Part shown: piece after piece, positions 33,650 through 53,332 of the stretch
How the letters are laid out: every line of letters begins with the position of its first letter
Position numbering within the stretch: the stretch's first letter is position 1
Virus record (IMG/VR): IMGVR_UViG_3300005056_000001
Span: 124,001 to 188,000 of that record
Reading direction: 5' to 3' (one strand)
Length of the DNA: 64,000 nt
Made by a program: the position numbers and the translations under genes
Notes under the pieces: generated by a model
Databases searched by the model: none
What the model was told of the DNA's origin: nothing
The model's input: the letters and a program-made list of their open reading frames with translations, nothing else

Positions 33650-33712
33650 TTTTACGTAAAACTTGCGTAATCCAAAACCTTGTTGTAGATTCGTTGTATA
33701 CCAAGAAGGTAG
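33650..33712 (+). promoter_or_regulatory. repeated early promoter with 5' stem-loop
   Basis: TTTTACGTAAAA-C-TTGCGT-N17-TAGATTCG, then TACC AAGAA GGTA. Confidence 0.8.
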
Positions 33713-33740
33713 CAACAGAAAAACATAAAAAACGAATATC

Positions 33741-34103
33741 ATGAATACTTCTAACAATACCAACAATACCACTACGATTACAATCAAACACAGATACACA
33801 GGAAAAACAATCCATAAGAGTATATCTGTGGGTAACACACTACGCAAAACTGCTTTGGAAGCGGTGAGATTGAGTGTGGATTTAAGTTATGCTGACCTGC
33901 ATAATATAGACCTAAGCGATTCTGACCTAACACATGCAAGTCTTATGTGTGCCAATTTAAATGGTGCCAACCTAAGAGGTGTGAATTTTTATGGTGCGGA
34001 CTTAGAAGAGGTAGACATGAGAGGTGCAGATATGGCGGGTGCATCTTTAACTGATGCATATACCGTGGGAATGTTTCCTCTTGTACCCGCCTTGAACTAT
34101 TAA
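33741..34103 (+). CDS. pentapeptide repeat protein
   Basis: ADLHN/SDLTH/ANLNG/ANLRG/ADLEE/ADMAG. Confidence 0.92.
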   Translation: MNTSNNTNNTTTITIKHRYTGKTIHKSISVGNTLRKTALEAVRLSVDLSYADLHNIDLSDSDLTHASLMCANLNGANLRGVNFYGADLEEVDMRGADMAGASLTDAYTVGMFPLVPALNY

Positions 34104-34138
34104 GTCCATAGCTCATTGACGACTTATTTTTTCATAGC

Positions 34139-34180
34139 AACAAGCCACAGCTCCTATAATAGGCGGTTGTGGCTTGTTTT
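34139..34180 (+). terminator. terminator hairpin (stem shared with 49881-49922)
   Basis: AACAAGCCACA...TGTGGCTTGTT. Confidence 0.7.
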
Positions 34181-34343
34181 TGGTTAGTGACGCAAAATAA
34201 AGGTAATTTAAATCGTGTATCTCAAACACTTGTTGTATATTACATCACTTCAAAATTATAAGGACAGAAAATAGAATTGGTAAAATAGAAGTCCTATAAT
34301 TTAGTCATAAAACCATTACAGAAACGGACTTAAAAGTATAAAA

Positions 34344-34982
34344 ATGAGTTGGCAGACAAAAAAGCTTTTGTATGAATTAAAAAACATAGAAATAGCAAAA
34401 TATAACGTAAATTTTAAATTTTTTTATGTACCTTGGAAGTCACAGGTCTTTGTTTATTGTGAGTTTAACAATGTTTTTTCTAGATATACAATGCATGGTG
34501 TTTGGGATAAAAAAGAATCTTTAGTGCTTATGATAGGACATTGGGATATCGAAGAAAAGAAACCATGTAGCTACTTTGAGCAAATATCAGCAGCACTGAA
34601 GGCCTCTATTAAAAGTAAAATAAAGACCATATCGAATGGTGATGTATTCTATGGAGATTCATTTTATTACTCCAATAGTATACTAAACGTATCAAAATTC
34701 GAATTCGGTAAAGTAAAACCATTAACATGGGACACAAGACACTCTTTATTTTACGACTACAAAAAAAAGAAATTCACACTAAATACAAATACAACAGTTC
34801 CTCAATTTCCGACAGGAAGACACGTGTCACGTATTTGTTCCGAAACATTCAAGAACTTGGATTCTTTCTTTGGTGATACCGAATGTTGGGGGGTTTTTGG
34901 TGGTAAGCGATCTAAAGATAACATCGACTACTTTGAAGGATTCTTAAAGGATTTGCAAACAAATAAAAATATTTTTACGTAA
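34344..34982 (+). CDS. hypothetical protein
   Basis: ORF whose stop overlaps the next promoter repeat. Confidence 0.6.
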   Translation: MSWQTKKLLYELKNIEIAKYNVNFKFFYVPWKSQVFVYCEFNNVFSRYTMHGVWDKKESLVLMIGHWDIEEKKPCSYFEQISAALKASIKSKIKTISNGDVFYGDSFYYSNSILNVSKFEFGKVKPLTWDTRHSLFYDYKKKKFTLNTNTTVPQFPTGRHVSRICSETFKNLDSFFGDTECWGVFGGKRSKDNIDYFEGFLKDLQTNKNIFT

Positions 34983-35016
34983 AACTTGCGTAATCAAAAA
35001 ACTTGTTGTAGATTTG
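34973..35016 (+). promoter_or_regulatory. repeated early promoter
   Basis: TTTTACGTAAAA-C-TTGCGT-N17-TAGATTTG. Confidence 0.8.
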
Positions 35017-35049
35017 TATCAACAATTAATCAGGTACTAAAAACACACA

Positions 35050-35286
35050 ATGAAAAATCCGACTTCTTACGTTTTAACTAAAAAAGTAACCGCATACAGC
35101 ACTAACGAGTTGTTAAATTTTGGCGGAAAATGGAGGCTGTATACAGACAATCAAATGTACGGTAAAGAGCCTATAATAAAAGAAAAGAGAATAGAAACCC
35201 TACTAAAGGGAGGCTGTATCAAAAAAGTCTTACTAGACAGGAATTTGGCAATAAATACGGTTACGTACAAGTATGTATTTGTGTAA
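35050..35286 (+). CDS. hypothetical early protein
   Basis: directly behind the promoter repeat. Confidence 0.6.
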   Translation: MKNPTSYVLTKKVTAYSTNELLNFGGKWRLYTDNQMYGKEPIIKEKRIETLLKGGCIKKVLLDRNLAINTVTYKYVFV

Positions 35287-35346
35287 CAAAAGTAACAACA
35301 AGAAGAATTTATTTAAAATTAGAAAACATATAAAACAGCTTTAATT

Positions 35347-35901
35347 ATGGCAACCTTTAAAAGAAATTTCAAGACACAGGCACACCTAGCAACATCAAAG
35401 AGTAATGCGCAAGCACCCATGAACTATATCATCTTCGAGGACGGTAACATAGTGGCCATTAATAGACATATTATACTTGTACAACCATTGACAGGGCATG
35501 GATTCTCTGAAGAAGAGATCGACTGTCTAGAGGGTAAGGCTTTACACCGTGATGCCTTCCAAGAGATTCTGCGCTATGACAGCATAAAAGTAGGTACAAC
35601 AGGTATTACATGCCTAAAGGGCAAGGTCAAAGTAGTATTCCCTTTGGAGACGTTGAAAGAACAGGGTGTTGACCGATTCCCTGAATACAAGTGTTTAATC
35701 CCTGACAATAATAATCCACAAGAGTTAGACACTATCAACCTTGACCTAAGCATTTTGTCAATGGTTACAAAACTAACCCTAAACATCAAGGGTCGGGTAT
35801 CGTTCACTTTCTATGGTCGTCTTAGGGGTTGTGTATTATGTGGTTTGGATGTTGATGAAACTATCTTGGTAATACCTTGTGAGGATGCACAACCAACATA
35901 A
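35347..35901 (+). CDS. beta-sliding-clamp-like fragment protein
   Basis: IVAINRHII...RFPEYKCLIP...LVIP pattern. Confidence 0.45.
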   Translation: MATFKRNFKTQAHLATSKSNAQAPMNYIIFEDGNIVAINRHIILVQPLTGHGFSEEEIDCLEGKALHRDAFQEILRYDSIKVGTTGITCLKGKVKVVFPLETLKEQGVDRFPEYKCLIPDNNNPQELDTINLDLSILSMVTKLTLNIKGRVSFTFYGRLRGCVLCGLDVDETILVIPCEDAQPT

Positions 35902-35930
35902 ACCTTCTGCCAATAAGCGTAGGAAAAATA

Positions 35931-35967
35931 AAAAGAAGCCTGCCCACAAAGGGTGGGCTTCTTTTTT
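35931..35967 (+). terminator. intrinsic terminator
   Basis: AAAGAAGCCTGCCC...GGGTGGGCTTCTTTTTT. Confidence 0.7.
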
Positions 35968-35993
35968 AAACAACAAAACAAAATAAACACTAC

Positions 35994-36566
35994 ATGAAAT
36001 GTTACCAAATAAAAGTAATGTTATTAGAAAAAGGCGATTATGTACGGGTATATCGTGGTTTGGCAAGGGTTCGCAAAGACGAAGTGTTTACCAACAAAGA
36101 AAGAATGGTAGAGGTCGAGATGTTGGACGATAATAGCCTTATAGTCGAAGGGGATATTATTAATGTTGACCGTGATATTGTGTTATACAACACGGACTAT
36201 AAATACTCCATGGAGGTTATGAAATATGTTGCGGCAGAGTACAACATAAAACTTGTACAGGTTGTAAAGGGTGACAAGTATTGTGTGGCAGATGGCGAGG
36301 AATCCTATATCAATCGGAGTTTTATTATCGGTAACGACGAGATTCAATTGGGGATTTATGAGAGTGACGAGCTAAGGTGTGCTTCTTTCTTTCATGAGTT
36401 GGGACATACTATGGTTACTGACGATTTCGCACAGGTTGTTGAAGGAATGTGGCATATAGAAGTAATGGCATGGCGAATTGGCTTTAATACAGCAAAGGGT
36501 TATGATATTTTGTTCAGCGATAGCACAACTAAATGGGCAGAGGAACAAATAGCAACCTATAAGTAG
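35994..36566 (+). CDS. HExxH metallopeptidase-like protein
   Basis: FFHELGH...E..AW. Confidence 0.6.
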   Translation: MKCYQIKVMLLEKGDYVRVYRGLARVRKDEVFTNKERMVEVEMLDDNSLIVEGDIINVDRDIVLYNTDYKYSMEVMKYVAAEYNIKLVQVVKGDKYCVADGEESYINRSFIIGNDEIQLGIYESDELRCASFFHELGHTMVTDDFAQVVEGMWHIEVMAWRIGFNTAKGYDILFSDSTTKWAEEQIATYK

Positions 36567-36615
36567 CAGGCATTGCAGGCGAAAACATCATATAATACCA
36601 TAAAAGCATCAAGAA

Positions 36616-37137
36616 ATGGAACACCAACAAGAATTAATCTCCCTTATAAAATCAAACGCCAATCTAATACATGTTCTTAAGTGTGTCCGTGGGGTCGATT
36701 CTAATTTTTGGTTGGGAGGCGGCACAATCAGAAGCCTTGTGTGGGACAAAATACACAACATAGAGCCCAAAAAGAGTCAGGATTATGATATTATACATTT
36801 CAGTGTCGAAAATGTGACATTGGAACATGACCTCATGCTTCAGCAAAAACTTATGGTTGTTGACCCAACAATACTTTGGGAGGTCTCAAACCTGTTAAGG
36901 CATTCATTTAAACGTAAAAACCTGTATCACGGATGTTCTGATTGGACTGACAAGGCTTCCTGTGTTATGGTTCGATTATTGGCAGACAATTCGATTGATG
37001 TTATTGCGCCACACGGGCTGTCATATGTGTTTAATTGTGTGTTGTCGCCCAACACAACCACAGAGGAATATCTAAAATTCTTACGTAAAAAGAAGTGGCT
37101 CCAACGCTATTCTAAGTTAACATTAAAAATTGATTAA
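36616..37137 (+). CDS. nucleotidyltransferase family protein (DUF925-like)
   Basis: WLGGGTIRSLVWD...DYDIIHF...WEV.N...APHGL...KKW. Confidence 0.8.
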   Translation: MEHQQELISLIKSNANLIHVLKCVRGVDSNFWLGGGTIRSLVWDKIHNIEPKKSQDYDIIHFSVENVTLEHDLMLQQKLMVVDPTILWEVSNLLRHSFKRKNLYHGCSDWTDKASCVMVRLLADNSIDVIAPHGLSYVFNCVLSPNTTTEEYLKFLRKKKWLQRYSKLTLKID

Positions 37138-37141
37138 AAAG

Positions 37142-37666
37142 ATGGAAAATAAAATACCACAAGAAGTACAGGGGATAATGGACATGATCGAGGCACGGGT
37201 TATGGAATATAAAAAGCCGACTCCATACACAATAATATTCCTACGCCACAACCTTGGGCGTGGGTGTAAACTTGGCGAAGGTGTTCAGGATTATAGAATC
37301 GTGTATGAGATATGTTTTGAGGGTGATAGAGCAAGCAGGGCAATGATTTGTAAATACACCTCGAACGATTATAAGATGTTAATTTTTCATAACATTATGG
37401 GATTTATCCCACTAAGCGAAGAAAGTCTCAACAGCATCATAAACCCGACACAAAAAACAAGGTCTTTCTGTCTTGGGAGCAAGGTTAAATTCCAATACGA
37501 CAATGAATGGTCAGAGTTATTAAATGAAGATATTCGTTCAATCGACTATTGCCTGTTGGGATTCGACTCGACCCGTTTTATCCTAATCAAATGGGAAGAC
37601 AGAGGAGGAATAGACATAATTATAAAAGAAAGAAATATTTATTCGACCCTAGAGTTGGTGGATTAG
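37142..37666 (+). CDS. hypothetical protein
   Basis: ORF. Confidence 0.6.
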   Translation: MENKIPQEVQGIMDMIEARVMEYKKPTPYTIIFLRHNLGRGCKLGEGVQDYRIVYEICFEGDRASRAMICKYTSNDYKMLIFHNIMGFIPLSEESLNSIINPTQKTRSFCLGSKVKFQYDNEWSELLNEDIRSIDYCLLGFDSTRFILIKWEDRGGIDIIIKERNIYSTLELVD

Positions 37667-37703
37667 TTTTTTGTGGTTATATTGCGACATAAAAATAATA
37701 CAA

Positions 37704-38078
37704 ATGATAAAGGAACTTGAACAATTAGAGCTAGTCACATCCGATGGATACCTAGAACAGCTCGTGTATGAATCAATAAAAAGCTTTGAGGCATATTGGA
37801 CAAATCGTGTGGACATGGCTTATGGTGTCACAAACATTGAGTTTGATGTTGGTATAGAAGTGTTAGTTAAAAGCGCAATCGGCACATCTATCAAATTTAA
37901 TTTAGTCAGTGCGAATTTTTGTCCAAGGAATGGTATCGGTTGGATACATAAAGGCTCGTTTGGTGTATGTGAATTATTTGTACAACTATCAGGAATTTAT
38001 CAAAAGGGTGCAACACCACAAAGCATGGCTGTCCTTCTTCGAACATTACACGAAAATCTAACAAAAATAATAAAATAA
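37704..38078 (+). CDS. hypothetical protein
   Basis: ORF. Confidence 0.6.
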   Translation: MIKELEQLELVTSDGYLEQLVYESIKSFEAYWTNRVDMAYGVTNIEFDVGIEVLVKSAIGTSIKFNLVSANFCPRNGIGWIHKGSFGVCELFVQLSGIYQKGATPQSMAVLLRTLHENLTKIIK

Positions 38079-38539
38079 TGGGAGTATCAACAACAGCAAT
38101 AATCCACAAGGGTATAAGTATTGAAAAAATTAAAGACTGTATCGAAAAAACATACGGTGAGGTGACAATATACAAAACGGGTATGGATAATTTTGTAACA
38201 TTTTTATTCAAAGTATACAATCGCACACGAAAACTGTCAATCTTTGGCGGAACTTATGCACAAGACGACCACGGTATTGATGGCATAGTTTTATCAATGA
38301 GTGGTAATAGTGCGTATATTTTTGCTGTCCTAAACAACATCCTAAAGGAGTTCGGGGGGTATATGGAGCACAACGATGTATTCATGCCCATAAATATCGA
38401 ACAGTTCAACAAGGGAGCCAATTTAACACCCAAAGAATTATTGGTAAATGACATAATCAGCACCGTTGGTTACGAACACCTAACAGAAATACTTGGATTA
38501 TTTGAGAAACATTCACTATTAACACAAGATAAAACATGA
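38078..38539 (+). CDS. hypothetical protein
   Basis: coupled ORF. Confidence 0.65.
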   Translation: MGVSTTAIIHKGISIEKIKDCIEKTYGEVTIYKTGMDNFVTFLFKVYNRTRKLSIFGGTYAQDDHGIDGIVLSMSGNSAYIFAVLNNILKEFGGYMEHNDVFMPINIEQFNKGANLTPKELLVNDIISTVGYEHLTEILGLFEKHSLLTQDKT

Positions 38540-38934
38540 ATAGCCACATGAAAAAGTATTCAATGCTAGACTATGAGAGTTGTAAAGGCAGACTGCCAAA
38601 ATGGATTATTATTAATTCTGTTACAAGAGGGCCTGTCCTTATTATTGGTGTGGTAGAATGGCATCGAGACCTTCTGAACGACACCGCCAACTATACTAAA
38701 GAAGACCAAGTATTGGGAGGAGGCGAATTTCGCAAAAGTAGACGCAACAAGGAACTATTTTTGTTTGGAGAATCAGGGGATTATGGAAAATGTGACGTGG
38801 AGGATGTTATGGGTGCATTCGAGAACTATGACAATATTCCTGCCGATCTAAAGGATTATTCGGTACGTTTCTCGACATTGATTAGTGCCTACACGGCCAC
38901 CAAAGAAGAAAATTCGATAAATATCAAAAAATAA
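38536..38934 (+). CDS. hypothetical protein, paralog of 38940
   Basis: PKWII...G.V..HR.L...GGG...G.S...G.C. Confidence 0.65.
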   Translation: MNSHMKKYSMLDYESCKGRLPKWIIINSVTRGPVLIIGVVEWHRDLLNDTANYTKEDQVLGGGEFRKSRRNKELFLFGESGDYGKCDVEDVMGAFENYDNIPADLKDYSVRFSTLISAYTATKEENSINIKK

Positions 38935-38939
38935 ACATC

Positions 38940-39302
38940 ATGACATTCCCAAAATGGATAATTATAGAGGACGAAAACGCCGAGTACCAATTCATTTGGG
39001 GCAAGGTAAACAAACACCGTCAGCTTATTGACTTTAACCTAGACTACGACAAAGAAACTGTCACGGTTATTGGTGGTGGATGGTGGAATATTGTGAAAGA
39101 CGGCTTCTTTGTTTATGGCAACTCGGTACAGTTCGGGGGTTGCGAGGAGAGTGTTGTCGAAAGTGCCATTCTGAACTACATAGAAAACAAGGACGATATA
39201 CAAGTCTATGAACCCATAGACAAATATAATATTTTCCAATCCTTCATGACACATTATCATGATGCCGTGTCTATGGATACATTCACCGAAATAAAGAAAT
39301 GA
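38940..39302 (+). CDS. hypothetical protein, paralog of 38536
   Basis: same motif pattern. Confidence 0.65.
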   Translation: MTFPKWIIIEDENAEYQFIWGKVNKHRQLIDFNLDYDKETVTVIGGGWWNIVKDGFFVYGNSVQFGGCEESVVESAILNYIENKDDIQVYEPIDKYNIFQSFMTHYHDAVSMDTFTEIKK

Positions 39303-39334
39303 GATACCAAGAAAGGTGTCTATAAACAAAAAAC

Positions 39335-40285
39335 ATGATAGATATATATACAGCAGCCGAACGATCAGTCTTAAACAAAATGATCGAGGATTTTAACATC
39401 CAAAATTCGTACAAGAAAGACCGACACCCAAGCGAAAAGGAGTTACTAAGATGGGTTCTCCACAAAAAAATCGGACTAGACACAAACCCACGAAAACATC
39501 CTGTATATCACAAGGATTTAATGTTTTGGTATGAAACATCCTCGGCAATCACCGATTTTCCGAAAGCAGGCGACACAATTAGACTGCGCAATATCGGTTC
39601 CGACACCTTCTTTAGAGATGTTGTCGTAATGGAAAATAATGGATTGTGTGTGTGCCTAACGTATCAGGATAACGAATACACCCTCCGCCTAGACAAGTTC
39701 GGTTCTTGGGGATGGGCACTTTCTAACATAATTGGAAAGGAAAACGAGGATTGGACAGAGGAAGAGCAAAAGCTTTGGAGAGTCGGTGGTCTTATTTACC
39801 ACGAACAACGATACGAGACTGCCTGTCTTGAAAAAGCAAAGACAATTCTTGATAAATCCAACAGGGGGGCAACGAAAGAGCATGAGCTATTGGTGTCAAA
39901 GCTAATGGAGTATGTTAGGTCGGCAAATGAAGAGGTTGTTGCCCATGAAATGAAAGAACGGTGTGTCGTGCCTTGCACAATAGGCGATGCTGTCATTAAT
40001 AGTTATCAAATAGTGCCATCTAATACATCGCCTGACAAAGGTGTGTCGATAGACTGTATTGCGATCTCGGGTTCCTTTATGGGGGAGTCGTTCATGTTTC
40101 ATGTTTTGCCAAATAACATGAATTTGACAGACCCGTCCTCCGACCTTTGGAGTTTTCCTAATAACGAAGACGACGGCTCTGTGATTGGCGAAATCAAGAA
40201 AAACTACACAGATTTTGTATTTTTCATTACCAAGACAATTAATATTTATAAACATAATAACATAAAATTTAATGAAGAATATTAA
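39335..40285 (+). CDS. hypothetical protein
   Basis: C-terminal domain resembles 40272 and 42063. Confidence 0.7.
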   Translation: MIDIYTAAERSVLNKMIEDFNIQNSYKKDRHPSEKELLRWVLHKKIGLDTNPRKHPVYHKDLMFWYETSSAITDFPKAGDTIRLRNIGSDTFFRDVVVMENNGLCVCLTYQDNEYTLRLDKFGSWGWALSNIIGKENEDWTEEEQKLWRVGGLIYHEQRYETACLEKAKTILDKSNRGATKEHELLVSKLMEYVRSANEEVVAHEMKERCVVPCTIGDAVINSYQIVPSNTSPDKGVSIDCIAISGSFMGESFMFHVLPNNMNLTDPSSDLWSFPNNEDDGSVIGEIKKNYTDFVFFITKTINIYKHNNIKFNEEY

Positions 40286-40691: not shown

Positions 40692-40743
40692 TATTAAGGC
40701 GTTACCAATAAGATATTAAGACACATCCTATATAAAACAAAGA

Positions 40744-41979: not shown

Positions 41980-42062
41980 GGAGTCTAATTACTCAAGAAA
42001 TTTATAGGAGATTTTTTAACAACAAAGCTTTTCGGTGCAAGAAAGGCAATAACACTAATATA

Positions 42063-44954: not shown

Positions 44955-44991
44955 AATTTAAGAAATGAAATAAACCACTTTAAATAAATTA

Positions 44992-45219: not shown

Positions 45220-45388
45220 TCATGACAAACATAAAACTCCTAGTCAAGAAGTCCCAACAAGAAAATGTCGAGAATCGCAAAAACATGTACGACAATATAG
45301 GAAAGCCCACAGGTGAAATCATCCCAAGCAGCAACACCCATTACCTAAACATGCTGAGTGGGCTCTTTGAAATCTTAAACAAAAACAA

Positions 45389-45721: not shown

Positions 45722-45728
45722 CAGTCTT

Positions 45729-46403: not shown

Positions 46404-46408
46404 CGAAC

Positions 46409-46828
46409 ATGAAATTTAAAATTGAAACATGCACAGAGATGTCCGACAATAACAACATGTCCCAAGAAGATATAGACGCAAAACAGCAGAAACTTGCCGA
46501 GGAAGGCATGAATGATTACATGGACTATATGCACGAAGCATCCCAAGCCCGCATTTTTCATAACAACGAAATCCTAAACACCATTTTTAAGGAAAAGGGC
46601 GAGGCGTTTCACCAAGACCTCTTGGCATACTGTGTGGGCTTGGAAAATATCGGAAAAGTTAGCATAAAATCAGAGCCAATTGGTACCATACAAAAAGAGG
46701 ATTGTGGCCAAATAGAACATGTATGGATTACGCAAACAACAGGATTTTTCGGGGATGATTTCCATGGTACTGCCTGTATTAAATTGTCCGAAAAACGTTA
46801 TCTTCATGTGCCATATTCAATGACGTAA
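46409..46828 (+). CDS. hypothetical protein
   Basis: ORF. Confidence 0.6.
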   Translation: MKFKIETCTEMSDNNNMSQEDIDAKQQKLAEEGMNDYMDYMHEASQARIFHNNEILNTIFKEKGEAFHQDLLAYCVGLENIGKVSIKSEPIGTIQKEDCGQIEHVWITQTTGFFGDDFHGTACIKLSEKRYLHVPYSMT

Positions 46829-46839
46829 TCAATAATATC

Positions 46840-47034
46840 ATGGAAAATATATACGAATACAAGAATAAAAAATATCGCATTTTTTCTGAAAGTAAAATGA
46901 AGCTTGATGGTGTTTGGGAAGATTGTATAATTTATCAAACTCTGTATCATAACCCTGACGGATGGATATGGGTCAGAACAAAAGAGGAATTTTTTAAATT
47001 GTTTACTGTTGTTTCAACAACCCCCAAAGTATAA
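46840..47034 (+). CDS. DUF1653-like small protein
   Basis: YK.KKY...IIYQ.LY....WVR..EEF. Confidence 0.6.
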   Translation: MENIYEYKNKKYRIFSESKMKLDGVWEDCIIYQTLYHNPDGWIWVRTKEEFFKLFTVVSTTPKV

Positions 47035-47435
47035 TGAAAAAATACGAGGACAAAGAAAGTATAAAGAAGAATGCAAAGGATCGATGGAAAAACATTCTTG
47101 AGGAGCATGACAATCCCAAGCCTATAGACCCGACCACCAAGGAAAATACCAAGGCTCTTGATGTGTTGATAGTAAAGTACAAAGACCTTAAAGAGTTGGC
47201 GGCAAAAAACTTGGAATTATTCAGGTCAACAAAAGAAGAGGACGAATACTTTGCCGTGTGGAATGTATACAGTTTGATTCTCTTTGACTTGGAGGACATG
47301 CGGATGTCTAGTTGGAACATGCGACTTGTGCCCTGCAAGACGTCGAGAGTGTATGCAAAAACAGTACCACAAGACCAAGTACCCGTAAGCAACGATATTG
47401 CCAAGAATGATCCACCCGAACAAGCATCCGAATGA
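47034..47435 (+). CDS. hypothetical protein
   Basis: ORF. Confidence 0.55.
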   Translation: MKKYEDKESIKKNAKDRWKNILEEHDNPKPIDPTTKENTKALDVLIVKYKDLKELAAKNLELFRSTKEEDEYFAVWNVYSLILFDLEDMRMSSWNMRLVPCKTSRVYAKTVPQDQVPVSNDIAKNDPPEQASE

Positions 47436-47767
47436 AATATAAAACCTACCTAAAAAACAGGACGCTTTTTGAGAAACGCTACCTTGAAGATGAACACAAA
47501 CGGTTTTTATGTAAGGGTTTGCTTGTGGAACTGCTAAATAGTATCCATAACAAGGCCCTGTTTTTCATGGTGTATTCCTATGACAGGAAAATGCAGGGTT
47601 CTATGGTACTAAGGTGTTTGGACACAAAAAGATTTGTGACAATTACGGGTCAGAACATGTCGGCACTGACAAGCCTTGATCTAACAAGGTCTTGTTTTGA
47701 TACGTATGGAGAAGTCGAGTATGACAGAATTATAAAATTTTGTAAGCAAAAAAGTAATAAAAAATGA
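47432..47767 (+). CDS. hypothetical protein
   Basis: ORF. Confidence 0.55.
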   Translation: MKYKTYLKNRTLFEKRYLEDEHKRFLCKGLLVELLNSIHNKALFFMVYSYDRKMQGSMVLRCLDTKRFVTITGQNMSALTSLDLTRSCFDTYGEVEYDRIIKFCKQKSNKK

Positions 47768-47967
47768 GTTATAATCCACCCGAGTGTTCTGATGATTTTG
47801 AACAGATTCAGAATATGTCGGACATGAGTCGATTAATGCAGGATACCACAAAGGCCTTTACCGAATTATTGAGTCTGTCACTGTCAGCAGCACTGTCAAG
47901 TATCGAGACTCTTTCAATGCCACACACGAATGAAAACACCGACAACAACACACCCGAGGAGGATTAA
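47764..47967 (+). CDS. hypothetical protein
   Basis: ORF. Confidence 0.5.
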   Translation: MSYNPPECSDDFEQIQNMSDMSRLMQDTTKAFTELLSLSLSAALSSIETLSMPHTNENTDNNTPEED

Positions 47968-48001
47968 CATCCTCCTACCAAACAATAAAAAGACACTATG
48001 T

Positions 48002-48361
48002 CTAGGTCAACAAGGTTTTTATGTCTTGTTTTAGCCTAGTCATAGTGTCAGATTGTTGAAGCTCGCTGTCAGATGTTTCCTTTTCCAATATTCGGAGAGT
48101 ACCAAGCAGACATTCCATTTGTGCAATGTCTAATTCTAAAAGATAATTTCCTGATGTATTAAAAAAGTAATCCTTCATTGCCGCAATTCCGTGCTTTCCA
48201 CAGTCGTCGAAGTTGCCCAAGCATATATTATAGACATACGTTGTGGATATCGGGAATATGTTTAGCGGGTCATCCTTTTTTAGTCTTGAATACACGGCAG
48301 GCGAGATGTGCAGGTCTTCTATTGCCTTTACGGTTCTTTGTTTTAGCTCTTCGTTGTTCAT
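48002..48361 (-). CDS. hypothetical protein
   Basis: last gene of the minus-strand early operon. Confidence 0.6.
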   Translation of the reverse strand: MNNEELKQRTVKAIEDLHISPAVYSRLKKDDPLNIFPISTTYVYNICLGNFDDCGKHGIAAMKDYFFNTSGNYLLELDIAQMECLLGTLRILEKETSDSELQQSDTMTRLKQDIKTLLT

Positions 48362-48861
48362 TTTCCTTTTCTTTTGATCTTAAAAATATAATTACAGCCA
48401 TAGGTCAGCATAGTCACATTGAATTTTAGAATATAGATGGATGCCGTCCCTAGTTTCTGCAAAACAAAACCACCACCAATATAAATTCCACTGTGGATAA
48501 GCTCTACGCAATGTCCAAGATTTTTCCCGAAAAGAATGCTATCGCCCTTCTTAAGTGTGTTTCTGTCTACCTTTGAGACGTCTGTTTTTTCGAACAAGTA
48601 TTCCTTTTTTATTGGGTCTAGGCTTTTGTGTTCTGTTACTTCTGTTGTGAAGTTGTGACAGTTTTTGTACCTGAACCGTTTTTCGTTGCAGAAGCGTCCA
48701 AGGTTAGCCTGTTGTTGTCGGGGTAGTCCTACCGCCTTGTTGTCAATTTTTATATCCACCTTCCCGACATTCTGATCAGGAATTTCAATTTCTCTTGCCT
48801 TGTACATATAGCCATTAAAGGACTCTTTTGTTTTGGTGTTTTTTGCCTTTAGGAATTTCAT
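48358..48861 (-). CDS. NlpC/P60 (papain-fold)-like Cys-His protein
   Basis: NCHNF...KKGD.ILF...HSGIYIG. Confidence 0.55.
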   Translation of the reverse strand: MKFLKAKNTKTKESFNGYMYKAREIEIPDQNVGKVDIKIDNKAVGLPRQQQANLGRFCNEKRFRYKNCHNFTTEVTEHKSLDPIKKEYLFEKTDVSKVDRNTLKKGDSILFGKNLGHCVELIHSGIYIGGGFVLQKLGTASIYILKFNVTMLTYGCNYIFKIKRKGK

Positions 48862-49211
48862 TTAAATCTTTTTGTACGAACCTCATTTCTAAGGTTCTGT
48901 AGGTCAATCTGTAGGTCAGGCTCAAACACAAAGCCTGTTTCTGTTCTGACAGCCCAACGGATTATTGGGAATGTGCCAAACAAACCGTGCCATATGGCCA
49001 AGAATGGTGCAACTGCCGTGCTCATGCTAGGAAGTATGATTGTGGCTGTCTGTCCTGCCTTTAAGTCCTCGAACTCGTCGAGTTCTAGCAGTATTGTTTC
49101 TAGTTGGTTTATTAATGTTTCGGGGGAGGTTTGATCCAACATACCTACCTTTGGTTGGTGGGTTGTTCCGTTGACTATGGCAGGATGCCCCGAGAAGTTT
49201 AGTATTTGCAT
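48858..49211 (-). CDS. csx15: Csx15-family protein (CRISPR type III ancillary homolog), stand-alone
   Basis: ILNFSGHP...IILP....A...LA..HG..G.FP.IR...DLQ.LR...R.KR. Confidence 0.8.
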   Translation of the reverse strand: MQILNFSGHPAIVNGTTHQPKVGMLDQTSPETLINQLETILLELDEFEDLKAGQTATIILPSMSTAVAPFLAIWHGLFGTFPIIRWAVRTETGFVFEPDLQIDLQNLRNEVRTKRFK

Positions 49212-49265
49212 TTTTTGATTTTTAAGGTGGATGTAAGTGGTTTTGTTGCTTGGGTGGTCGTGCTA

Positions 49266-49448
49266 TTATAGGTAATCAGCATCAAGACCACTATTCATTA
49301 ACCCTTCAAAGGCGTGCATTACACACACACCGTCATCCTCCCATATTAGAAGTATTCTCTTTACTGCCCCTTCTAGGCTTGGTGGAAATGTAATAATGTA
49401 TTCAGCACCATCCTCGTCTCTTAAATTTATATTAGTTTTACCGTTCAT
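49266..49448 (-). CDS. small hypothetical early protein
   Basis: directly downstream of an RNA motif copy. Confidence 0.65.
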   Translation of the reverse strand: MNGKTNINLRDEDGAEYIITFPPSLEGAVKRILLIWEDDGVCVMHAFEGLMNSGLDADYL

Positions 49449-49530
49449 AATATTTCGACACTTTCAGCCGCTTGTTACCTTATCCTATTTTGGCAATCGT
49501 ATGCAGCATTACTATAGGGCTGCTATTTTT
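49449..49530 (-). ncRNA. candidate structured cis-regulatory RNA, copy D
   Basis: 4-copy repeat with structure-preserving substitutions. Confidence 0.7.
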
Positions 49531-49546
49531 AATTAAGTTTTTTATA

Positions 49547-49750
49547 TTAAAAACCGTACTCTCTTGCAATGCTCATTGCTAGTACGTAACACTTTTCTTC
49601 ATTCGAATCCCCGTTGGAGAATTTATTAAAACTATAATCCTCTAACGACCTTAGCACCTTTCCACATAACCGTTTCCATGCTAGGTTGCTTTTGGTAGAT
49701 TACATCGCTTCTATCTCGTGTAATTCCTTTAAAGCTTTTGCGTAATCCAT
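49547..49750 (-). pseudogene. 67-codon gene interrupted by TAA at codon 17
   Basis: MDYAKALKELHEIEAM*STKSNLAWKRL...AREYGF*. Confidence 0.55.
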
Positions 49751-49793
49751 GATGTTTTTAGTGTTAAAAGTGTACTACCTTATTGGTATGCAA

Positions 49794-49835
49794 CGAATCT
49801 ACAACAAGTTTTTAATTACGCAAGTTTTACGTAAA
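49794..49835 (-). promoter_or_regulatory. repeated early promoter, copy D (16-nt spacer)
   Basis: TTTACGTAAAAC-TTGCGT-N16-TAGATTCG. Confidence 0.78.
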
Positions 49836-49880
49836 ATATTTTACTTTATTTCAAAACTTTCTTTTTGTAAATTGCAACAA

Positions 49881-49922
49881 AACAAGCCACAAACCCCGAC
49901 ATATAAGTGGTTGTGGCTTGTT
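49881..49922 (-). terminator. terminator hairpin (stem shared with 34139-34178)
   Basis: AACAAGCCACA...TGTGGCTTGTT. Confidence 0.7.
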
Positions 49923-49975
49923 TTAAATTATTTTAAGGATTGTAAGTCCACTATTCATTAACCATTCGACACTTT

Positions 49976-50329
49976 CTACCTACGTTTAATATAATAATAT
50001 TTTATATCAACCAAGGAACTAACCGACAAAAACCTAGGAGTAAGAACAATAACATTTTCACTAGTCCCCATCCTTTTGTAATTCGGATTAAAATCGTCAT
50101 ACATATTCAATGTATAGGTCAGTGTGTCTACAAACTTATCCGAGACAATAACAAGTGTTAATAATGAGTCATTGACGCATATTGTGCCTGACTCATTGAT
50201 GTATTCACCTAAAACAACTTCATTGCTTAAAGAAACCTTTGTGACAGTTTTTACTTGGCTGTAACATAATGTCTGTCCGTAACAGTATGACGTAAGCAAT
50301 AACAATAAAGGAAATAATAATTTTTTCAT
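49976..50329 (-). CDS. putative secreted protein
   Basis: signal peptide MKKLLFPLLLLLTSYCYG-Q (Bacteroidota-style Gln at +1). Confidence 0.6.
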   Translation of the reverse strand: MKKLLFPLLLLLTSYCYGQTLCYSQVKTVTKVSLSNEVVLGEYINESGTICVNDSLLTLVIVSDKFVDTLTYTLNMYDDFNPNYKRMGTSENVIVLTPRFLSVSSLVDIKYYYIKRR

Positions 50330-50481
50330 TTTGTGTGATTTTGTGATTCTGTTGTGTATTAAAATATTTTTGTTAAAGGCATATATGTACCTAACTTTGT
50401 AGGTACTTTCTAAGGTAGCGTTTTAGGCCCTTTTCTCCTTCTGTAAGGCTTTCTTGGTCATATTAAAAGGTGTATGCTTCT

Positions 50482-50904
50482 TTATGCCATTGCTGACATA
50501 TATTCTCCTTTTGGTATACTATCAATTCTGTTAATTGATTTGATGAGGAATTTTCTCCTTTCCCAATTAGGCAAATCTACCTTCCAATCTTCATAGTTGG
50601 AAGAGTCTAAACATTTCCTGCTTGGTTTGTCCCTAGTAACAGCGGAGATAACTCCGCCTAGCATGGTTGTTTTAACATAAGCAATCGCCTCCTCTTTCGA
50701 GGGTACACTTAACCCACATATTGGGCGGTTCAGGTATACATCGCCATTCGTTTCATCTTTATCCGTGAGACTTACCTCACAGATAAATTTGCTAATTATC
50801 CCGACACATGTTGTGTAAGCTGCCCCATCTTCACGGTATGCTACACAGGCAACAGATGGAAAAATAACACCGCCAATACTCTGTACATTTATTATGATTT
50901 GCAT
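50482..50904 (-). CDS. hypothetical early protein
   Basis: directly downstream of an RNA motif copy. Confidence 0.65.
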   Translation of the reverse strand: MQIIINVQSIGGVIFPSVACVAYREDGAAYTTCVGIISKFICEVSLTDKDETNGDVYLNRPICGLSVPSKEEAIAYVKTTMLGGVISAVTRDKPSRKCLDSSNYEDWKVDLPNWERRKFLIKSINRIDSIPKGEYMSAMA

Positions 50905-50986
50905 AATATTTCAGCACTTTCAGCCGCATGCCACCTTATCCTATTTGAGTGATCGTATGCAGCTAAATTATAGGGCTGCTATGTTT
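50905..50986 (-). ncRNA. candidate structured cis-regulatory RNA, copy C
   Basis: as copy D. Confidence 0.7.
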
Positions 50987-51000
50987 TTAATTGTAATTTT

Positions 51001-51240
51001 CTATATCTTACTTGCAAGGTTTTTAACGCCTATTTTTTCACCGTAACTGTTTACTGCTGCGTCAACATCATTCAGCTCTGTATACGAAATCAACTCGTAT
51101 AATTCAAACCCTTGTTGGGGAGTTAGAGTATAAAATTCTACTTGGTTCCCGATATTGAATTCAATCCCTGCTTCAATACAACGGTTTGAGTTATTACATA
51201 ATGCATTGTATGTGTCGAGTACTGTATTAGAAGTTTTCAT
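51001..51240 (-). CDS. hypothetical early protein
   Basis: start reassigned to 51240, behind the promoter. Confidence 0.65.
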   Translation of the reverse strand: MKTSNTVLDTYNALCNNSNRCIEAGIEFNIGNQVEFYTLTPQQGFELYELISYTELNDVDAAVNSYGEKIGVKNLASKI

Positions 51241-51282
51241 AATATTAGTCTTTTTTAAGTGTACTACCTTATTGGTATGCAA

Positions 51283-51325
51283 CAAATCTACAACAAGTTT
51301 TTTAATTACGCAAGTTTTACGTAAA
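51283..51325 (-). promoter_or_regulatory. repeated early promoter, copy C
   Basis: TTTACGTAAAAC-TTGCGT-N17-TAGATTTG. Confidence 0.8.
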
Positions 51326-51363
51326 GTTAATTCAAAGTATTTCAAACTTTATTCCGAAACAAA

Positions 51364-51417
51364 AAACAAAAACCGTCATAACCCTGTATTTATCAGTGAT
51401 ATGACGGTTTTTGTTTT
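51364..51417. terminator. terminator hairpin
   Basis: AAACAAAAACCGTCATA...TATGACGGTTTTTGTTT. Confidence 0.7.
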
Positions 51418-51429
51418 AGATTAAAATTA

Positions 51430-51837
51430 CTACTTCTTTGGTAAGTCAATATTTTTACCAAAGAAAACGACATCAATAAGGTCGTCAACTCTAGATGTTA
51501 CAGCCTTTGACGAGGTCAGGTCGTTCCATTTGGTTTCTTTGACAGTTTCGGACGTCGCATTTGTCCAATAGCTGTTGCAATTTCCGTACATCATGGCCGA
51601 ATGATAGGCTTGATCGTCTGCCATTTCTTCGGCAGTTGAAAAGCTTTTTCCGCTGTTAGATTTGAATGGTTTATCCATGCTATTTGTTTTAAGTGTTAGA
51701 GAACCCTCATTAATGTAATCTATATGCTTTGTAGGTGGCTCGTCGTAAATACCAACCATTTCCCCGTGTGGAAACTCTTTGATTTCTGCAACTTCGTAAA
51801 GTGTGCCTCCGAATATTACTTGGTCGCCCTTTTTCAT
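51430..51837 (-). CDS. hypothetical protein
   Basis: ORF in the cassette array. Confidence 0.65.
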   Translation of the reverse strand: MKKGDQVIFGGTLYEVAEIKEFPHGEMVGIYDEPPTKHIDYINEGSLTLKTNSMDKPFKSNSGKSFSTAEEMADDQAYHSAMMYGNCNSYWTNATSETVKETKWNDLTSSKAVTSRVDDLIDVVFFGKNIDLPKK

Positions 51838-51902
51838 ATCTATATTAGTTTAAAATGTTAAGGTTTGTAAGCAGGTTTGTACTTGCTTAGGTTACTATAC
51901 AG

Positions 51903-52187
51903 TTAAATACTAGTGATTTCAACAGAACCCAACTTTCCTCTAAAATTATACATGAATTTCACCCATTCCCCTTTTACGGGTTCGTAGCATTGGAAGTAAT
52001 CTTTCATTGTTACGCATCCCACTTCCTCAAGCCCCCATACCTCAAGGACTTTTATAATTTCGGGTAGCCAACCCGTAGATAGAGCAACTACATCTGACTC
52101 ATGATATGCTGTGTCATACAACTCCGCATTTAGTTTTTCTATTTTCGCTACAGCTAGTGTAGCATTTTTAAGATTTATAGTTTTCAT
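51903..52187 (-). CDS. hypothetical early protein
   Basis: directly downstream of an RNA motif copy. Confidence 0.65.
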   Translation of the reverse strand: MKTINLKNATLAVAKIEKLNAELYDTAYHESDVVALSTGWLPEIIKVLEVWGLEEVGCVTMKDYFQCYEPVKGEWVKFMYNFRGKLGSVEITSI

Positions 52188-52269
52188 AATAATTCGGCAC
52201 TTTCGGCCGCTTGTCGCCTTATCCCATTTAGGTGATCGTATGCAGCATTACTATAGGGCTGCTATGTTT
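52188..52269 (-). ncRNA. candidate structured cis-regulatory RNA, copy B
   Basis: as copy D. Confidence 0.7.
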
Positions 52270-52307
52270 TAATTAAAATTTTCTATAATTACCCTTTCGG
52301 TATGCAA

Positions 52308-52349
52308 CGAATCTACAACAAGTTTTTAAATTACGCAAGTTTTACGTAA
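52308..52349 (-). promoter_or_regulatory. repeated early promoter, copy B
   Basis: TTACGTAAAAC-TTGCGT-N17-TAGATTCG. Confidence 0.8.
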
Positions 52350-52503
52350 TATTAATTTGAAATATTTTAAAACTTTCTTTTTGTTTTAAATTACATTAAG
52401 AATTGTAAGCAGTTTTTGCACTTGCTTAGGTATTATTTCTATCTCTACACAAAACCGTATCCACCAATAAATAGGATTGAAACACTTCGTCTTTCCCCCC
52501 TTG

Positions 52504-53169
52504 TTACATGATATCTTTATCTAATTCGGCAATTTCTTGCAGGAGTTTGGCTTTCCTTGCCTTAGCCCTAGCTATCTTAGGGCTGCCGAATCTTACCCAA
52601 AATTCGGGGAAAAATTCCCCTGTGCTATCCGTCTCTATTAGGTCGTCCACAGAAAACATTCTTAATAGAGTATGATTAGGTAACGTGCGTCTCAGCTCAT
52701 CTAAGATGCAAAAATATAGGAATCCTTTAAATCCTATACTTTCTAGTGCTTGAATCAAGCCCTTTAGCTGATTCAACCTATCTTGTTCGGGTAATCGCCT
52801 ATAGATTCTTAACGTCTCAAGGAGGTGATTCTGTATTAATTCCCCGTTATATGTTATTGGGGCATCCCCTACGTGGTTCTTTACTACATCTAGGTATACC
52901 TGAAATATACTTACTGAAGGAGTAAGCACCTCGCTATGGTGCTCTTCTGTATTCCATTCAGAAAGCTCGAAGCCATCCCATCGGCTTTTTTCTTCGTTAT
53001 AAAAGTATTCATATACTCGCCCATCAAGTATTAAGTACTTGTTGGACTTCAATTCAGACTCTTCCTCCTTTGTCAAATCAACAAGGAATCCCTGCCAATT
53101 ATCAAACTGACACTCTTTAGACTTAATTAAGTCTAATGTCCCCGTACTTAAAACTTCAAATCTACTCAT
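52504..53169 (-). CDS. hypothetical early protein
   Basis: directly downstream of an RNA motif copy. Confidence 0.7.
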   Translation of the reverse strand: MSRFEVLSTGTLDLIKSKECQFDNWQGFLVDLTKEEESELKSNKYLILDGRVYEYFYNEEKSRWDGFELSEWNTEEHHSEVLTPSVSIFQVYLDVVKNHVGDAPITYNGELIQNHLLETLRIYRRLPEQDRLNQLKGLIQALESIGFKGFLYFCILDELRRTLPNHTLLRMFSVDDLIETDSTGEFFPEFWVRFGSPKIARAKARKAKLLQEIAELDKDIM

Positions 53170-53251
53170 AATATTTCGGCACTCTCAACCGCTTGTCACC
53201 TTATCCTATTTGAGTGATCGTGTGCAGCATTACTATAGGGCTGCTATGTTT
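53170..53251 (-). ncRNA. candidate structured cis-regulatory RNA, copy A
   Basis: as copy D. Confidence 0.7.
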
Positions 53252-53289
53252 TAATTAAAATTTTCTGTCATTAACCTTTCGGTATGCAA

Positions 53290-53332
53290 CAAATCTACAA
53301 CAAGGTTTTTAATTACGCAAGTTTTACGTAAA
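53290..53332 (-). promoter_or_regulatory. repeated early promoter, copy A
   Basis: TTTACGTAAAAC-TTGCGT-N17-TAGATTTG. Confidence 0.8.

What the first reader, a model, noticed from the sequence alone, without database searches (positions are those of the whole stretch)
33650..53332. Six-copy early promoter with a palindromic upstream site and 5' stem-loop defines shuffleable cassettes
Seen: TTTACGTAAA (palindrome)-AC-TTGCGT-N17-TAGATT(T/C)G at 33650 and 34973 (+) and at 49794, 51283, 52308 and 53290 (-); the spacer is N16 in the 49794 copy. Five copies are followed by an ACC-loop-GGT hairpin at the predicted 5' end. Each heads one or a few unrelated small genes. Established: TAnnTTTG is the Bacteroidota -7 element, and T4-type phages shuffle accessory genes through repeated early-promoter stem-loop elements. 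Inference: a recombination-driven array of host-takeover genes with a shared operator.
Basis: partly seen in the sequence, partly recalled or inferred. Interest (0 to 1): 0.68.

Follow-up and report, generated by a model that had tools for sequence, protein, structure and literature searches.

The report
Repeated promoter cassettes in jumbo phage
A marine jumbo phage of Bacteroidota carries eight near-identical copies of a host-type promoter in front of short groups of unrelated small genes, and the copies show traces of recombination, much like the gene-shuffling promoter cassettes known from T4-like phages.

Summary
A 42-43 bp block (TTTACGTAAAACTTGCGTAAT, 6-7 variable bases, CTTGTTGTAGATTYG) occurs 6 times in the window and 8 times in the 368-kb genome, against 0 expected. 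Every copy is intergenic and points the same way as the genes behind it.

The genome is a distant T4-like jumbo phage. Its nearest cultured kin infect Tenacibaculum, and its genes lack Shine-Dalgarno sites. The block fits the Bacteroidota sigma-A promoter (TTG at -33, TAGATTYG at -7). It heads short units of unrelated ORFans, most ending at intrinsic terminators, in a region where kin share no genes.

Supported: the shuffleable-cassette (PeSL-like) reading.
- Flank blocks of four neighbouring copies occur in all four combinations, so an exchange took place between -6 and +7.
- In two contigs from another phage type, a homologous promoter is the left edge of a gene replacement.

Not shown:
- "Early" timing: no RNA data exist.
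- The palindrome as operator: it is one of two TTRCGTAA boxes 11 bp apart and is not kept in the homologous promoters.
- The 5' hairpin: 4 bp, 5 of 8 copies, no covariation.

By-product: a 90-nt conserved leader abuts the ATG of unrelated genes, here and in other marine contigs.

The parts
33651..33693 (+). Promoter copy P1: TTTACGTAAA, second box TTGCGTAA with the -33 TTG, spacer, -7 box TAGATTCG. Predicted start near 33698.
34974..35016 (+). Promoter copy P2 (-7 box TAGATTTG). The stop codon of the upstream 212-aa ORF (34980-34982) lies inside its palindrome. No 5' hairpin.
49794..49835 (-). Promoter copy P3 (spacer one base shorter; TAGATTCG). Predicted start near 49789.
51283..51325 (-). 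Promoter copy P4 (TAGATTTG). Predicted start near 51278.
52308..52350 (-). Promoter copy P5 (ATTACGTAAA; TAGATTCG). Predicted start near 52303.
53290..53332 (-). Promoter copy P6 (TAGATTTG). Predicted start near 53285. Divergent from a TnpB gene.
34199..34245 (+). Possible degenerate ninth copy (CACTTGTTGTATATTAC; boxes decayed) between the P1 terminator and the 212-aa ORF.
33699..33711 (+). Short 5' hairpin UACC-loop5-GGUA after P1. The same hairpin lies at 49776-49788, 51265-51277, 52290-52302 and 53272-53284 on the minus strand.
   Evidence: -2.2 to -3.8 kcal/mol; 5 of 8 copies; stem letters never vary
33620..33650 (+). AT-rich upstream element (AAGAAAsTTTkrAAATA type, -79 to -47), present in 7 of 8 copies and in the homologous promoters of L028 and L029.
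34139..34183 (+). Intrinsic terminator ending the P1 unit. Its stem belongs to the same family as the one at 49879-49925.
35930..35967 (+). Intrinsic terminator after the two genes of the P2 unit.
51360..51417 (-). Terminator of the P5 unit, directly upstream of P4 (terminator-promoter composite).
49879..49925 (-). Terminator of the P4 unit, directly upstream of P3 (terminator-promoter composite).
53167..53262 (-). Conserved leader of about 90 nt ending at the ATG of the 221-aa gene. Other copies: 52185-52280, 50902-50997 and 49446-49540 (all minus strand).
33741..34103 (+). P1 unit: pentapeptide-repeat protein, 120 aa.
   Evidence: PF00805, E 6e-21
34344..34982 (+). 212-aa ORFan behind the degenerate copy. 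It runs into P2.
35050..35901 (+). P2 unit: 78-aa and 184-aa ORFs. The latter has a paralogue at G000 111837.
52504..53169 (-). P6 unit: 221-aa ORFan. A 70% identical orthologue with the same leader lies on Tara contigs L025 and L026.
51430..52187 (-). P5 unit: 94-aa and 135-aa ORFans, separated by a repeated intercistronic hairpin.
49976..51240 (-). P4 unit: 79-aa ORF, leader, 140-aa ORF, and a 117-aa ORF with a signal-peptide-like N-terminus.
48002..49750 (-). P3 unit: small ORF broken by an in-frame TAA (49700-49702), leader, then ORFs of 60, 117, 167 and 119 aa. The last has a homologue in the promoter-headed unit of G001 and L028.

Best explanation
These are eight copies of one strong promoter read by the host RNA polymerase with its main sigma factor. 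It is of the Bacteroidota type: TTG at -35..-33 and TAGATTYG at -12..-5.

The phage is a distant T4-like jumbo phage, probably of marine Flavobacteriaceae. Each copy starts a short transcription unit of one to five unrelated small accessory genes. Most units end at an intrinsic terminator, which in three cases sits just upstream of the next copy (terminator, AT-rich element, promoter).

Because the copies share more than 40 bp of identity, they serve as sites of homologous exchange. Upstream and downstream modules (AT-rich element, 5' hairpin, 90-nt leader, genes) have been re-assorted at them, and homologous promoter-plus-ORFan units occur in an unrelated siphovirus-like phage. In function and evolution this is the Bacteroidota counterpart of the PeSL cassettes of T4-like phages.

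Shown: the repeat, its placement, its fit to the consensus, the mosaic flanks, and the gene replacement next to the homologous promoter.
Inferred: promoter activity, the start site, early timing, and any role of the TTRCGTAA boxes and the 5' hairpin.
For: - Repeat: 6 copies in the window and 8 in the genome against 0 expected.
- Placement: all copies are intergenic, co-oriented with the genes behind them and 35-130 nt from a start codon. Terminators bound the units.
- Host type: only 31 of 572 ORFs have a Shine-Dalgarno-like 4-mer, and leaders are A-rich. The large terminase is 46% identical to that of Tenacibaculum phage pT24. A relative carries a Por_Secre_tail gene. The -7 box is the accepted Flavobacterium/Bacteroides element (PMC7641319).
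- No phage RNA polymerase found with PF00562, PF00623 or PF00940.
- A separate motif, TTGTACATA without a -33 box, precedes the Gp23-like capsid gene, the terminase and tail genes. The host-type promoters are therefore not the late class.
- T4-like genome: Portal_T4 at 175 bits, Gp23 at 25.8 bits.
- Hypervariable setting: synteny with L009 and L010 stops at the helicase, and none of the cassette genes is shared.
- Mosaic flanks: 6 informative sites up to position -6 group P6 with P4 and P5 with P3. Ten sites from +6 onward group P6 with P5 and P4 with P3. No site supports the third grouping.
- Other phages: a homologous promoter in L028 and L029/G001 is 88% identical between those two, while the first gene(s) behind it are replaced. 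Two genes of that unit have homologues in two different arrays of this genome, 160 kb apart.
Against: - No transcript data exist. Only DNA contigs of three runs hold parts of the region, and they show no joints.
- Three of eight copies have C in place of the conserved T of TAnnTTTG.
- Identity extends well beyond what sigma needs (-46 to -27 is invariant). Related Tenacibaculum phage pT24 has about 30 ordinary promoters with no such extended identity. A second factor or recent spread must therefore be invoked.
- Mosaic flanks of four copies could also arise by separate insertion of modules rather than reciprocal exchange.
- No RecA/UvsX-like gene was found with PF00154 (a weak test).
- No close relative of this genome exists in the collections, so cassette turnover in this lineage itself is not shown.
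Confidence: 0.65

Rival explanations
1. These are activator-dependent (middle or delayed-early) promoters. The two TTRCGTAA boxes at -46..-39 and -35..-28, 11 bp apart on one face of the helix, are bound by a phage-encoded factor that recruits host polymerase. This would resemble the MotA box at -30 of T4 middle promoters or the pho boxes of PhoB.
For: The stretch from -46 to -27 is invariant in all 8 copies, while the spacer next to it varies. Ordinary promoters of this genome and of pT24 show no such boxes. TTACGTAA occurs 9 times in the genome, 8 of them here. The phage is T4-like.
Against: The second box contains a normal -33 TTG at the normal distance, so sigma could bind unaided. No MotA C-terminal domain was found (PF09158; a weak test). 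The homologous promoters of L028 and L029 keep GTAAAACTTGC but lose both CGTAA cores. No DNA-binding protein was recognised in or beside the arrays.
Confidence: 0.2
2. This is the first reader's version: the palindrome TTTACGTAAA is an operator for a dimeric repressor that shuts all units off together.
For: The 8-bp dyad TTACGTAA is invariant in 8 of 8 copies and is nearly confined to them.
Against: The outer dyad positions are not kept: -47 is T in only 5 of 8 copies. The centre lies at about -42.5, upstream of the -33 box, which is a place more usual for activators. The left half is not conserved in homologous promoters, whereas the right half plus -33 is. The palindrome can be read equally well as one of two direct TTRCGTAA repeats.
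Confidence: 0.15
3. The extended identity has no regulatory meaning. The copies are young or kept alike by gene conversion, and only the -33 and -7 boxes matter.
For: Recombination among copies is indicated. Positions invariant here differ in L028 and L029, so they are not required by the host polymerase as such.
Against: Variation inside the block is confined to the spacer patch and one -7 position, which is the pattern expected under selection on contacted bases. Identity stops sharply at -46 in all copies, even where coding sequence abuts (G000 11089).
Confidence: 0.3
4. It is not a host-polymerase promoter. It could be a site for a phage-encoded polymerase or sigma factor, or a non-transcriptional repeat such as a transposon end, iteron or packaging site.
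For: Near-identical multi-copy promoters are typical of phage-encoded polymerases. A sub-threshold sigma region-2 match exists at G000 260862-260993 (19.6 bits). A TnpB gene lies next to P6.
Against: No polymerase family was detected. The weak sigma-like ORF better suits the late motif. The copies are dispersed, always gene-oriented, lack terminal inverted repeats or target duplications, and are not clustered like iterons. A homologous element heads a small-gene cluster in an unrelated 45-kb phage.
Confidence: 0.05

Closest known systems
PeSL (promoter-early stem-loop) cassettes of T4-like phages (Arbiol et al. 2010, PMC2839356; Comeau et al. 2014, PMC4122927)
   Same: A repeated host-consensus promoter with an AT-rich upstream region, often just after a terminator hairpin. 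It flanks ORFans in hypervariable regions of a T4-like genome. There is evidence of exchange at the repeats, and of gene replacement bounded by the element.
   Different: The promoter is of the Bacteroidota -33/-7 type, not sigma-70 -35/-10. Identity is far more extended (about 45 bp, with two TTRCGTAA boxes). Only 3 of 8 copies have the upstream terminator. Some copies carry a 5' hairpin and a 90-nt leader. The homologous element is also found in a non-T4 phage. Mini-circles were not tested.
Bacteroidota sigma-A promoters (-33 TTTG, -7 TAnnTTTG)
   Same: TTG lies 20 nt upstream of TAGATTTG. The genome has no Shine-Dalgarno sites, as in Bacteroidota.
   Different: Three copies read TAGATTCG. 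The -33 box reads CTTG. The surrounding bases are invariant too, which ordinary promoters of pT24 and of this genome are not.
T4 middle promoters (MotA box at -30 plus -10 element)
   Same: A conserved box around -30 to -35 in a T4-like phage, with a good downstream element.
   Different: A normal -33 TTG is present. No MotA-like domain was found. There are two boxes rather than one.
Terminator-promoter composites in Tenacibaculum phage pT24 and in relative L009
   Same: A hairpin plus T-run immediately followed by TAtaTTTG, in front of small genes.
   Different: In those elements the hairpin overlaps the -33 box, and the copies share only the consensus boxes. Here the promoter block itself is near-identical and lies about 30 nt after the hairpin.

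Membership tests
PeSL cassettes of T4-like phages | Sequence matching the host's main-sigma promoter consensus | tested here: met
   TTG at -35..-33 and TAGATTYG at -12..-5 in 8 of 8 copies; exact TAnnTTTG in 5 of 8. Activity was not tested.
PeSL cassettes of T4-like phages | [quoted passage not shown] | tested here: met
   The AAGAAAGTTTTGAAATA-type element is present in 7 of 8 copies and in L028 and L029.
PeSL cassettes of T4-like phages | Adjacent stem-loop able to terminate upstream transcription | tested here: inconclusive
   A strong hairpin plus T-run lies within 60 nt upstream of P3, P4 and G000 11477. P5 has a weaker hairpin without a T-run. P1, P2, P6 and G000 11089 have none.
PeSL cassettes of T4-like phages | Preferential location in hyperplastic regions, next to ORFans | tested here: met
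   Synteny with L009 and L010 ends at the helicase, and no cassette gene is shared. The genes have no family matches apart from one pentapeptide protein.
PeSL cassettes of T4-like phages | Differences between close relatives have their breakpoints at the elements | tested here: inconclusive
   No close relative of this genome was found. For the homologous promoter in L028 versus L029 the feature is met: 88% identity through the promoter up to the ATG, then replaced genes. Within this genome the mosaic flanks place an exchange between -6 and +7.
PeSL cassettes of T4-like phages | Excised mini-circles formed between neighbouring elements | not testable with these tools
   Only low-coverage DNA contigs were available, and they showed no joints.
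PeSL cassettes of T4-like phages | Host genome is a T4-like myovirus | tested here: met
   Portal_T4 at 175 bits and Gp23 at 25.8 bits, over its cut-off. The large terminase hits T4-type terminases.
Bacteroidota sigma-A promoter | Transcription start a few bases after the -7 box | not testable with these tools
   No RNA run holds the phage.
Bacteroidota sigma-A promoter | Host belongs to Bacteroidota | tested here: met
   The evidence is indirect: Shine-Dalgarno-like sites before 5% of ORFs, nearest cultured kin are Tenacibaculum phages, and a Por_Secre_tail gene in relative L009.
T4 middle promoter (MotA-dependent) | MotA-like activator encoded by the phage | tested here: not met
   PF09158 gave no match. 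This is a weak test, because nothing rang in the controls either.
Operator for a dimeric repressor | Dyad symmetry conserved as a unit, also in homologous promoters | tested here: not met
   The core 8-mer is invariant here, but the outer dyad positions vary. The left half and the second box are changed in L028 and L029.

The most novel reading that the evidence does not exclude
The promoter and the 90-nt leader are parts of a portable expression kit. The kit carries ORFans between unrelated phages of marine Flavobacteriaceae, from a T4-like jumbo myovirus to a 45-kb siphovirus-like phage. The leader would be a new structured 5'-UTR RNA that controls translation or stability of whatever gene is placed behind it, in a phylum that lacks Shine-Dalgarno sites.
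Probability: 0.25. Interest if true: 0.72.

Novelty: new variant of a known kind. Interest (0 to 1): 0.55.

Why it matters
PeSL-type regulatory cassettes have been described only in T4-like phages of Proteobacteria and their sigma-70 promoters. Here the same logic appears with the very different Bacteroidota promoter. The sequence itself shows signs of exchange at the copies, and the same promoter-plus-ORFan unit turns up in a phage of another morphotype. That would make repeated strong promoters a general route by which phages gain, lose and trade accessory genes.

The element also offers a ready, compact, probably strong promoter for marine Flavobacteriia, where genetic tools are few. The leader found alongside it is a candidate new cis-acting RNA.

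Tried and rejected
- Exact scans for the 20-mer and 31-mer promoter patterns in viral contigs and metagenome contigs found nothing. Only a pattern reduced to the bases later seen to be shared found G001.
- A single-protein locus scan with the helicase found nothing.
- blastn of the region and of promoter plus leader against GenBank phages gave only chance AT-rich matches.
- Sequencing runs: no RNA holder. Four DNA runs were laid and three held sparse short contigs, with no joints. One loose end was simply the G000 11089 copy.
- Rfam gave nothing at gathering or at E-value thresholds.
- Atlas look-ups of the 221-aa and 212-aa proteins gave no usable hit.
- Host inference through TnpB relatives in genome contigs was uninformative.
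- Pfam searches of the genome found no RNA polymerase, MotA, RecA or Por_Secre_tail, and only sub-threshold sigma bits. One sigma-like hit proved to be an endonuclease.
- Stop-codon recoding was considered and rejected: table 11 already gives 90% coding.
- The simple sigma-70 scan is blind to these promoters.
- TAnnTTTG alone is not strand-biased in intergenic DNA (46 sense against 45 antisense), so it was used only together with the -33 box.


Full report
**1. The observation**

The expected number is 0.05, and none of 100 shuffles reached six. A longer pattern from the -33 box to the -7 box finds five copies with no mismatch. It misses the 49835 copy only because that spacer is one base shorter.

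The aligned copies are identical from TTACGTAAAAC through TAGATTYGT, apart from a 6-7 nt spacer patch and one T/C position. Identity falls to 50-70% on both sides.

The window is bases 124001-188000 of a 368,109-bp virus record. That record holds two more copies, at G000 11477 and 11089. A decayed ninth copy may lie at window 34199-34245.

**2. What genome this is**

- GC content is 38%, and table 11 gives about 90% coding, so there is no sign of recoding.
- The terminal repeat is only 99 bp, so map position says nothing about the order of DNA entry.
- The genome has a T4-type portal (175 bits). It also has a Gp23-like capsid gene (25.8 bits).
- Its large terminase is closest to Tenacibaculum phage pT24 at 46% identity. 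The next closest are PTm1 and PTm5.
- Only 31 of 572 ORFs have a Shine-Dalgarno-like 4-mer, and leaders are A-rich and G-poor.
- Contigs of the phage occur in seawater and subsurface metagenomes.

It is therefore a distant T4-like jumbo phage, most likely of marine Flavobacteriaceae. No RNA polymerase family was detected, so host polymerase must be used at least at the start of infection.

**3. Anatomy of the element**

I take TAGATTYG as the Bacteroidota -7 box, spanning -12 to -5 (the consensus TAnnTTTG is cited from PMC7641319).

- CTTG then lies at -36..-33, which is the -33 box.
- The predicted start is the A of GCATACC.
- The palindrome TTACGTAA spans -46..-39.
- A near-repeat, TTGCGTAA, spans -35..-28. 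The region can therefore be read as two TTRCGTAA boxes 11 bp apart, the second holding the -33 TTG.
- TTACGTAA occurs nine times in the genome, eight of them in the promoter copies.
- Further upstream, seven of eight copies have an AT-rich element of the type AAGAAAGTTTTGAAATA at a fixed distance.
- Three copies (P3, P4 and G000 11477) follow a strong hairpin with a T-run.
- Downstream, five copies have a UACC-loop-GGUA hairpin starting at about +2. It is weak (-2.2 to -3.8 kcal/mol), its stem letters never vary, and one copy has a mismatch.

**4. Transcription units**

| Promoter | Genes behind it | End of unit |
|---|---|---|
| P1 | Pentapeptide-repeat protein | Terminator 34139-34183 |
| Degenerate copy | 212-aa ORF; its stop codon lies inside the P2 palindrome | Runs into P2 |
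| P2 | 78-aa and 184-aa ORFs | Terminator 35930-35967 |
| P6 | Leader, 221-aa ORF | No clear terminator (weak hairpin without a T-run before P5) |
| P5 | Leader, 94-aa and 135-aa ORFs | Terminator 51360-51417 |
| P4 | 79-aa ORF, leader, 140-aa and 117-aa ORFs | Terminator 49879-49925 |
| P3 | Small ORF with an in-frame TAA, leader, four ORFs | Convergent hairpin near 47960 |

The proteins are unrelated to each other. Except for the pentapeptide protein, they have no Pfam or PHROG family and no Atlas neighbours.

**5. Other promoter-like classes give context**

- Canonical TTG-N18-21-TAnnTTTG sites in intergenic DNA, with a gene within 250 nt, number only 21 in 368 kb.
- A second repeated class couples two GTTAA repeats, a hairpin whose loop carries the TTG, and TATATTTGTAAGGCAATCA. 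It has about 11 copies.
- A third motif, TTGTACATA, has no -33 box and lies 20-90 nt before about 27 genes. These include the capsid gene, the terminase and a tail gene. It looks like the late class.

The element under study is thus a host-type class, not the late class. This makes early expression plausible but does not show it.

**6. Relatives and variability**

- The helicase next to the array has only two close homologues among 5.8 billion proteins.
- Their contigs (L009 at 47% identity, L010 at 57%) are collinear with window 14660-30358. After the helicase they share no gene with this phage.
- L009 also fills that place with small ORFans behind repeated terminator-promoter composites of the ordinary TTTG-N19-TATATTTG kind.
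- Phage pT24 likewise has about 30 ordinary promoters in its first 100 kb, many fused to hairpins, but no near-identical family.

**7. Evidence for exchange at the copies**

Among the four neighbouring minus-strand copies, six informative sites up to -6 group P6 with P4 and P5 with P3. Ten sites from +6 on, together with the presence of the leader, group P6 with P5 and P4 with P3. One further site far upstream (alignment column 24) also shows this second grouping, against its neighbours. No site supports the third grouping.

All four combinations of upstream and downstream block exist. No tree without exchange explains this, so the junction lies in the shared bases between -6 and +7.

G000 11477 likewise shares its upstream type with P1 and its downstream type with P2.

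**8. The same promoter in other phages**

A pattern reduced to the shared bases found IMG/VR contig UViG_3300022072_000022 (G001, 44.7 kb). A leader pattern found a Tara contig, L028. Both carry a terminator, the AAAGAAAGTTT element, GTAAAACTTGC and GTTGTATATTTGTGTCAAC.

G001 has a terminase, a tape measure protein and a primase, and shares only four small proteins with this genome. It is therefore another kind of phage.

In G001 and L028 the unit behind the promoter holds homologues of window 48002-48361 and of G000 10430-10687 side by side. In this genome those two genes sit in two different arrays 160 kb apart.

Between L028 and L029 the promoter region is 88% identical up to the ATG. The first gene(s) are then replaced, and synteny resumes afterwards.

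The same comparison weakens the operator idea. GTAAAACTTGC and the -7 region are invariant across phages, but TTAC of the palindrome and GTAA of the second box are not.

**9. The leader**

A block of about 90 nt ends exactly at the ATG of four unrelated genes in the minus-strand array.

- It folds into three short hairpins.
- 99% of cells are paired across eight sequences, with one compensatory pair (UA to CG, 5:3) and several wobble changes.
- 40 of 500 shuffles do as well, so the structural support is only suggestive.
- No Rfam family matches.
- It also precedes a 70% identical orthologue of the 221-aa gene on Tara contigs L025 and L026. The gene after that orthologue differs and is absent from this genome.
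- It precedes two further unrelated genes on L027 and L028.

Its function is unknown. My guess is a translation or stability module for a phylum without Shine-Dalgarno sites.

**10. Verdict**

The repeat is real and far beyond chance.

- It is most likely a strong host-type promoter family heading accessory-gene units. I put this at about 0.85 for 'promoter' and about 0.55 for 'early'.
- The copies have recombined, so the PeSL analogy holds in its main points.
- The palindrome as a shared operator is possible but is the weakest part, at about 0.15-0.3 for any specific factor site.
- 'Host takeover' is untested.

I rate it a new variant of a known kind, of moderate interest. It is raised somewhat by the sharing across phage types and by the leader.

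Noticed in passing
window 53167-53262, 52185-52280, 50902-50997, 49446-49540 (all -); also L025 6-100 (+), L028 4650-4745 (-), L027 1013-1064 (-): A conserved leader of about 90 nt with three short hairpins ends exactly at the ATG of unrelated genes, both in this phage and in other marine contigs. It has no Rfam match, and covariation support is only suggestive.
   Followed up: partly
window about 7345-7425 (+); about 10 more in G000 (e.g. 2670, 31228, 247302, 309730, 310614, 354003): A second repeated promoter-like class: two GTTAA repeats, a hairpin whose loop carries the TTG, then TATATTTGTAAGGCAATCA.
   Followed up: partly
window 11159 (+), 16715 (-), 19215 (-); about 27 genome-wide: The motif TTGTACATA, without a -33 box, lies 20-90 nt before genes including the Gp23-like capsid gene, the terminase and a tail gene. 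It is probably the late promoter class of this T4-like phage.
   Followed up: partly
window 53530-54735 (+): A TnpB (IS605 OrfB / Cas12f-like) gene lies divergent from promoter copy P6. Relatives found in bacterial genomes were distant and gave no host clue.
   Followed up: partly
window 49700-49702 (-), inside the ORF 49545-49750: The first small ORF behind P3 is interrupted by an in-frame TAA and continues in the same frame. It is likely a decaying accessory gene; the genome shows no sign of recoding.
   Followed up: no
window 52401-52428 (-) and 51862-51889 (-): A two-copy intercistronic hairpin (CCTAAGCAAGT..CTGCTTACAA) without a T-run follows two cassette genes.
   Followed up: no
window 34139-34183 (+) and 49879-49925 (-): Two terminators in different arrays share the same stem sequence (AACAAGCCACA / TGTGGCTTGTTTT). 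The terminators are therefore re-used modules too.
   Followed up: no
window 36616-37137, 38536-38934, 38940-39302 (+): The long plus-strand gene row behind P2 holds an NTP_transf_6 nucleotidyltransferase and two adjacent Janus/Ocnus (phosphohistidine-phosphatase-like) genes.
   Followed up: no
G001 (IMG/VR UViG_3300022072_000022) 32926-33000 (+) = L029 6215-6334: A 44.7-kb siphovirus-like phage shares with this jumbo phage a homologous promoter and four small proteins but nothing else. This suggests cassette exchange across phage types.
   Followed up: partly
L009 21521-21651: Seven tandem 15-nt repeats (AATAACACTATAAAA type) lie just upstream of, and run into the start of, a gene in the relative's ORFan array.
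   Followed up: no
L034/L035 (Tenacibaculum phage pT24) about 19.1, 60.4 and 79.6 kb: Three dispersed repeats of about 200 nt in intergenic DNA of pT24, seen in a 12-mer count.
   Followed up: no
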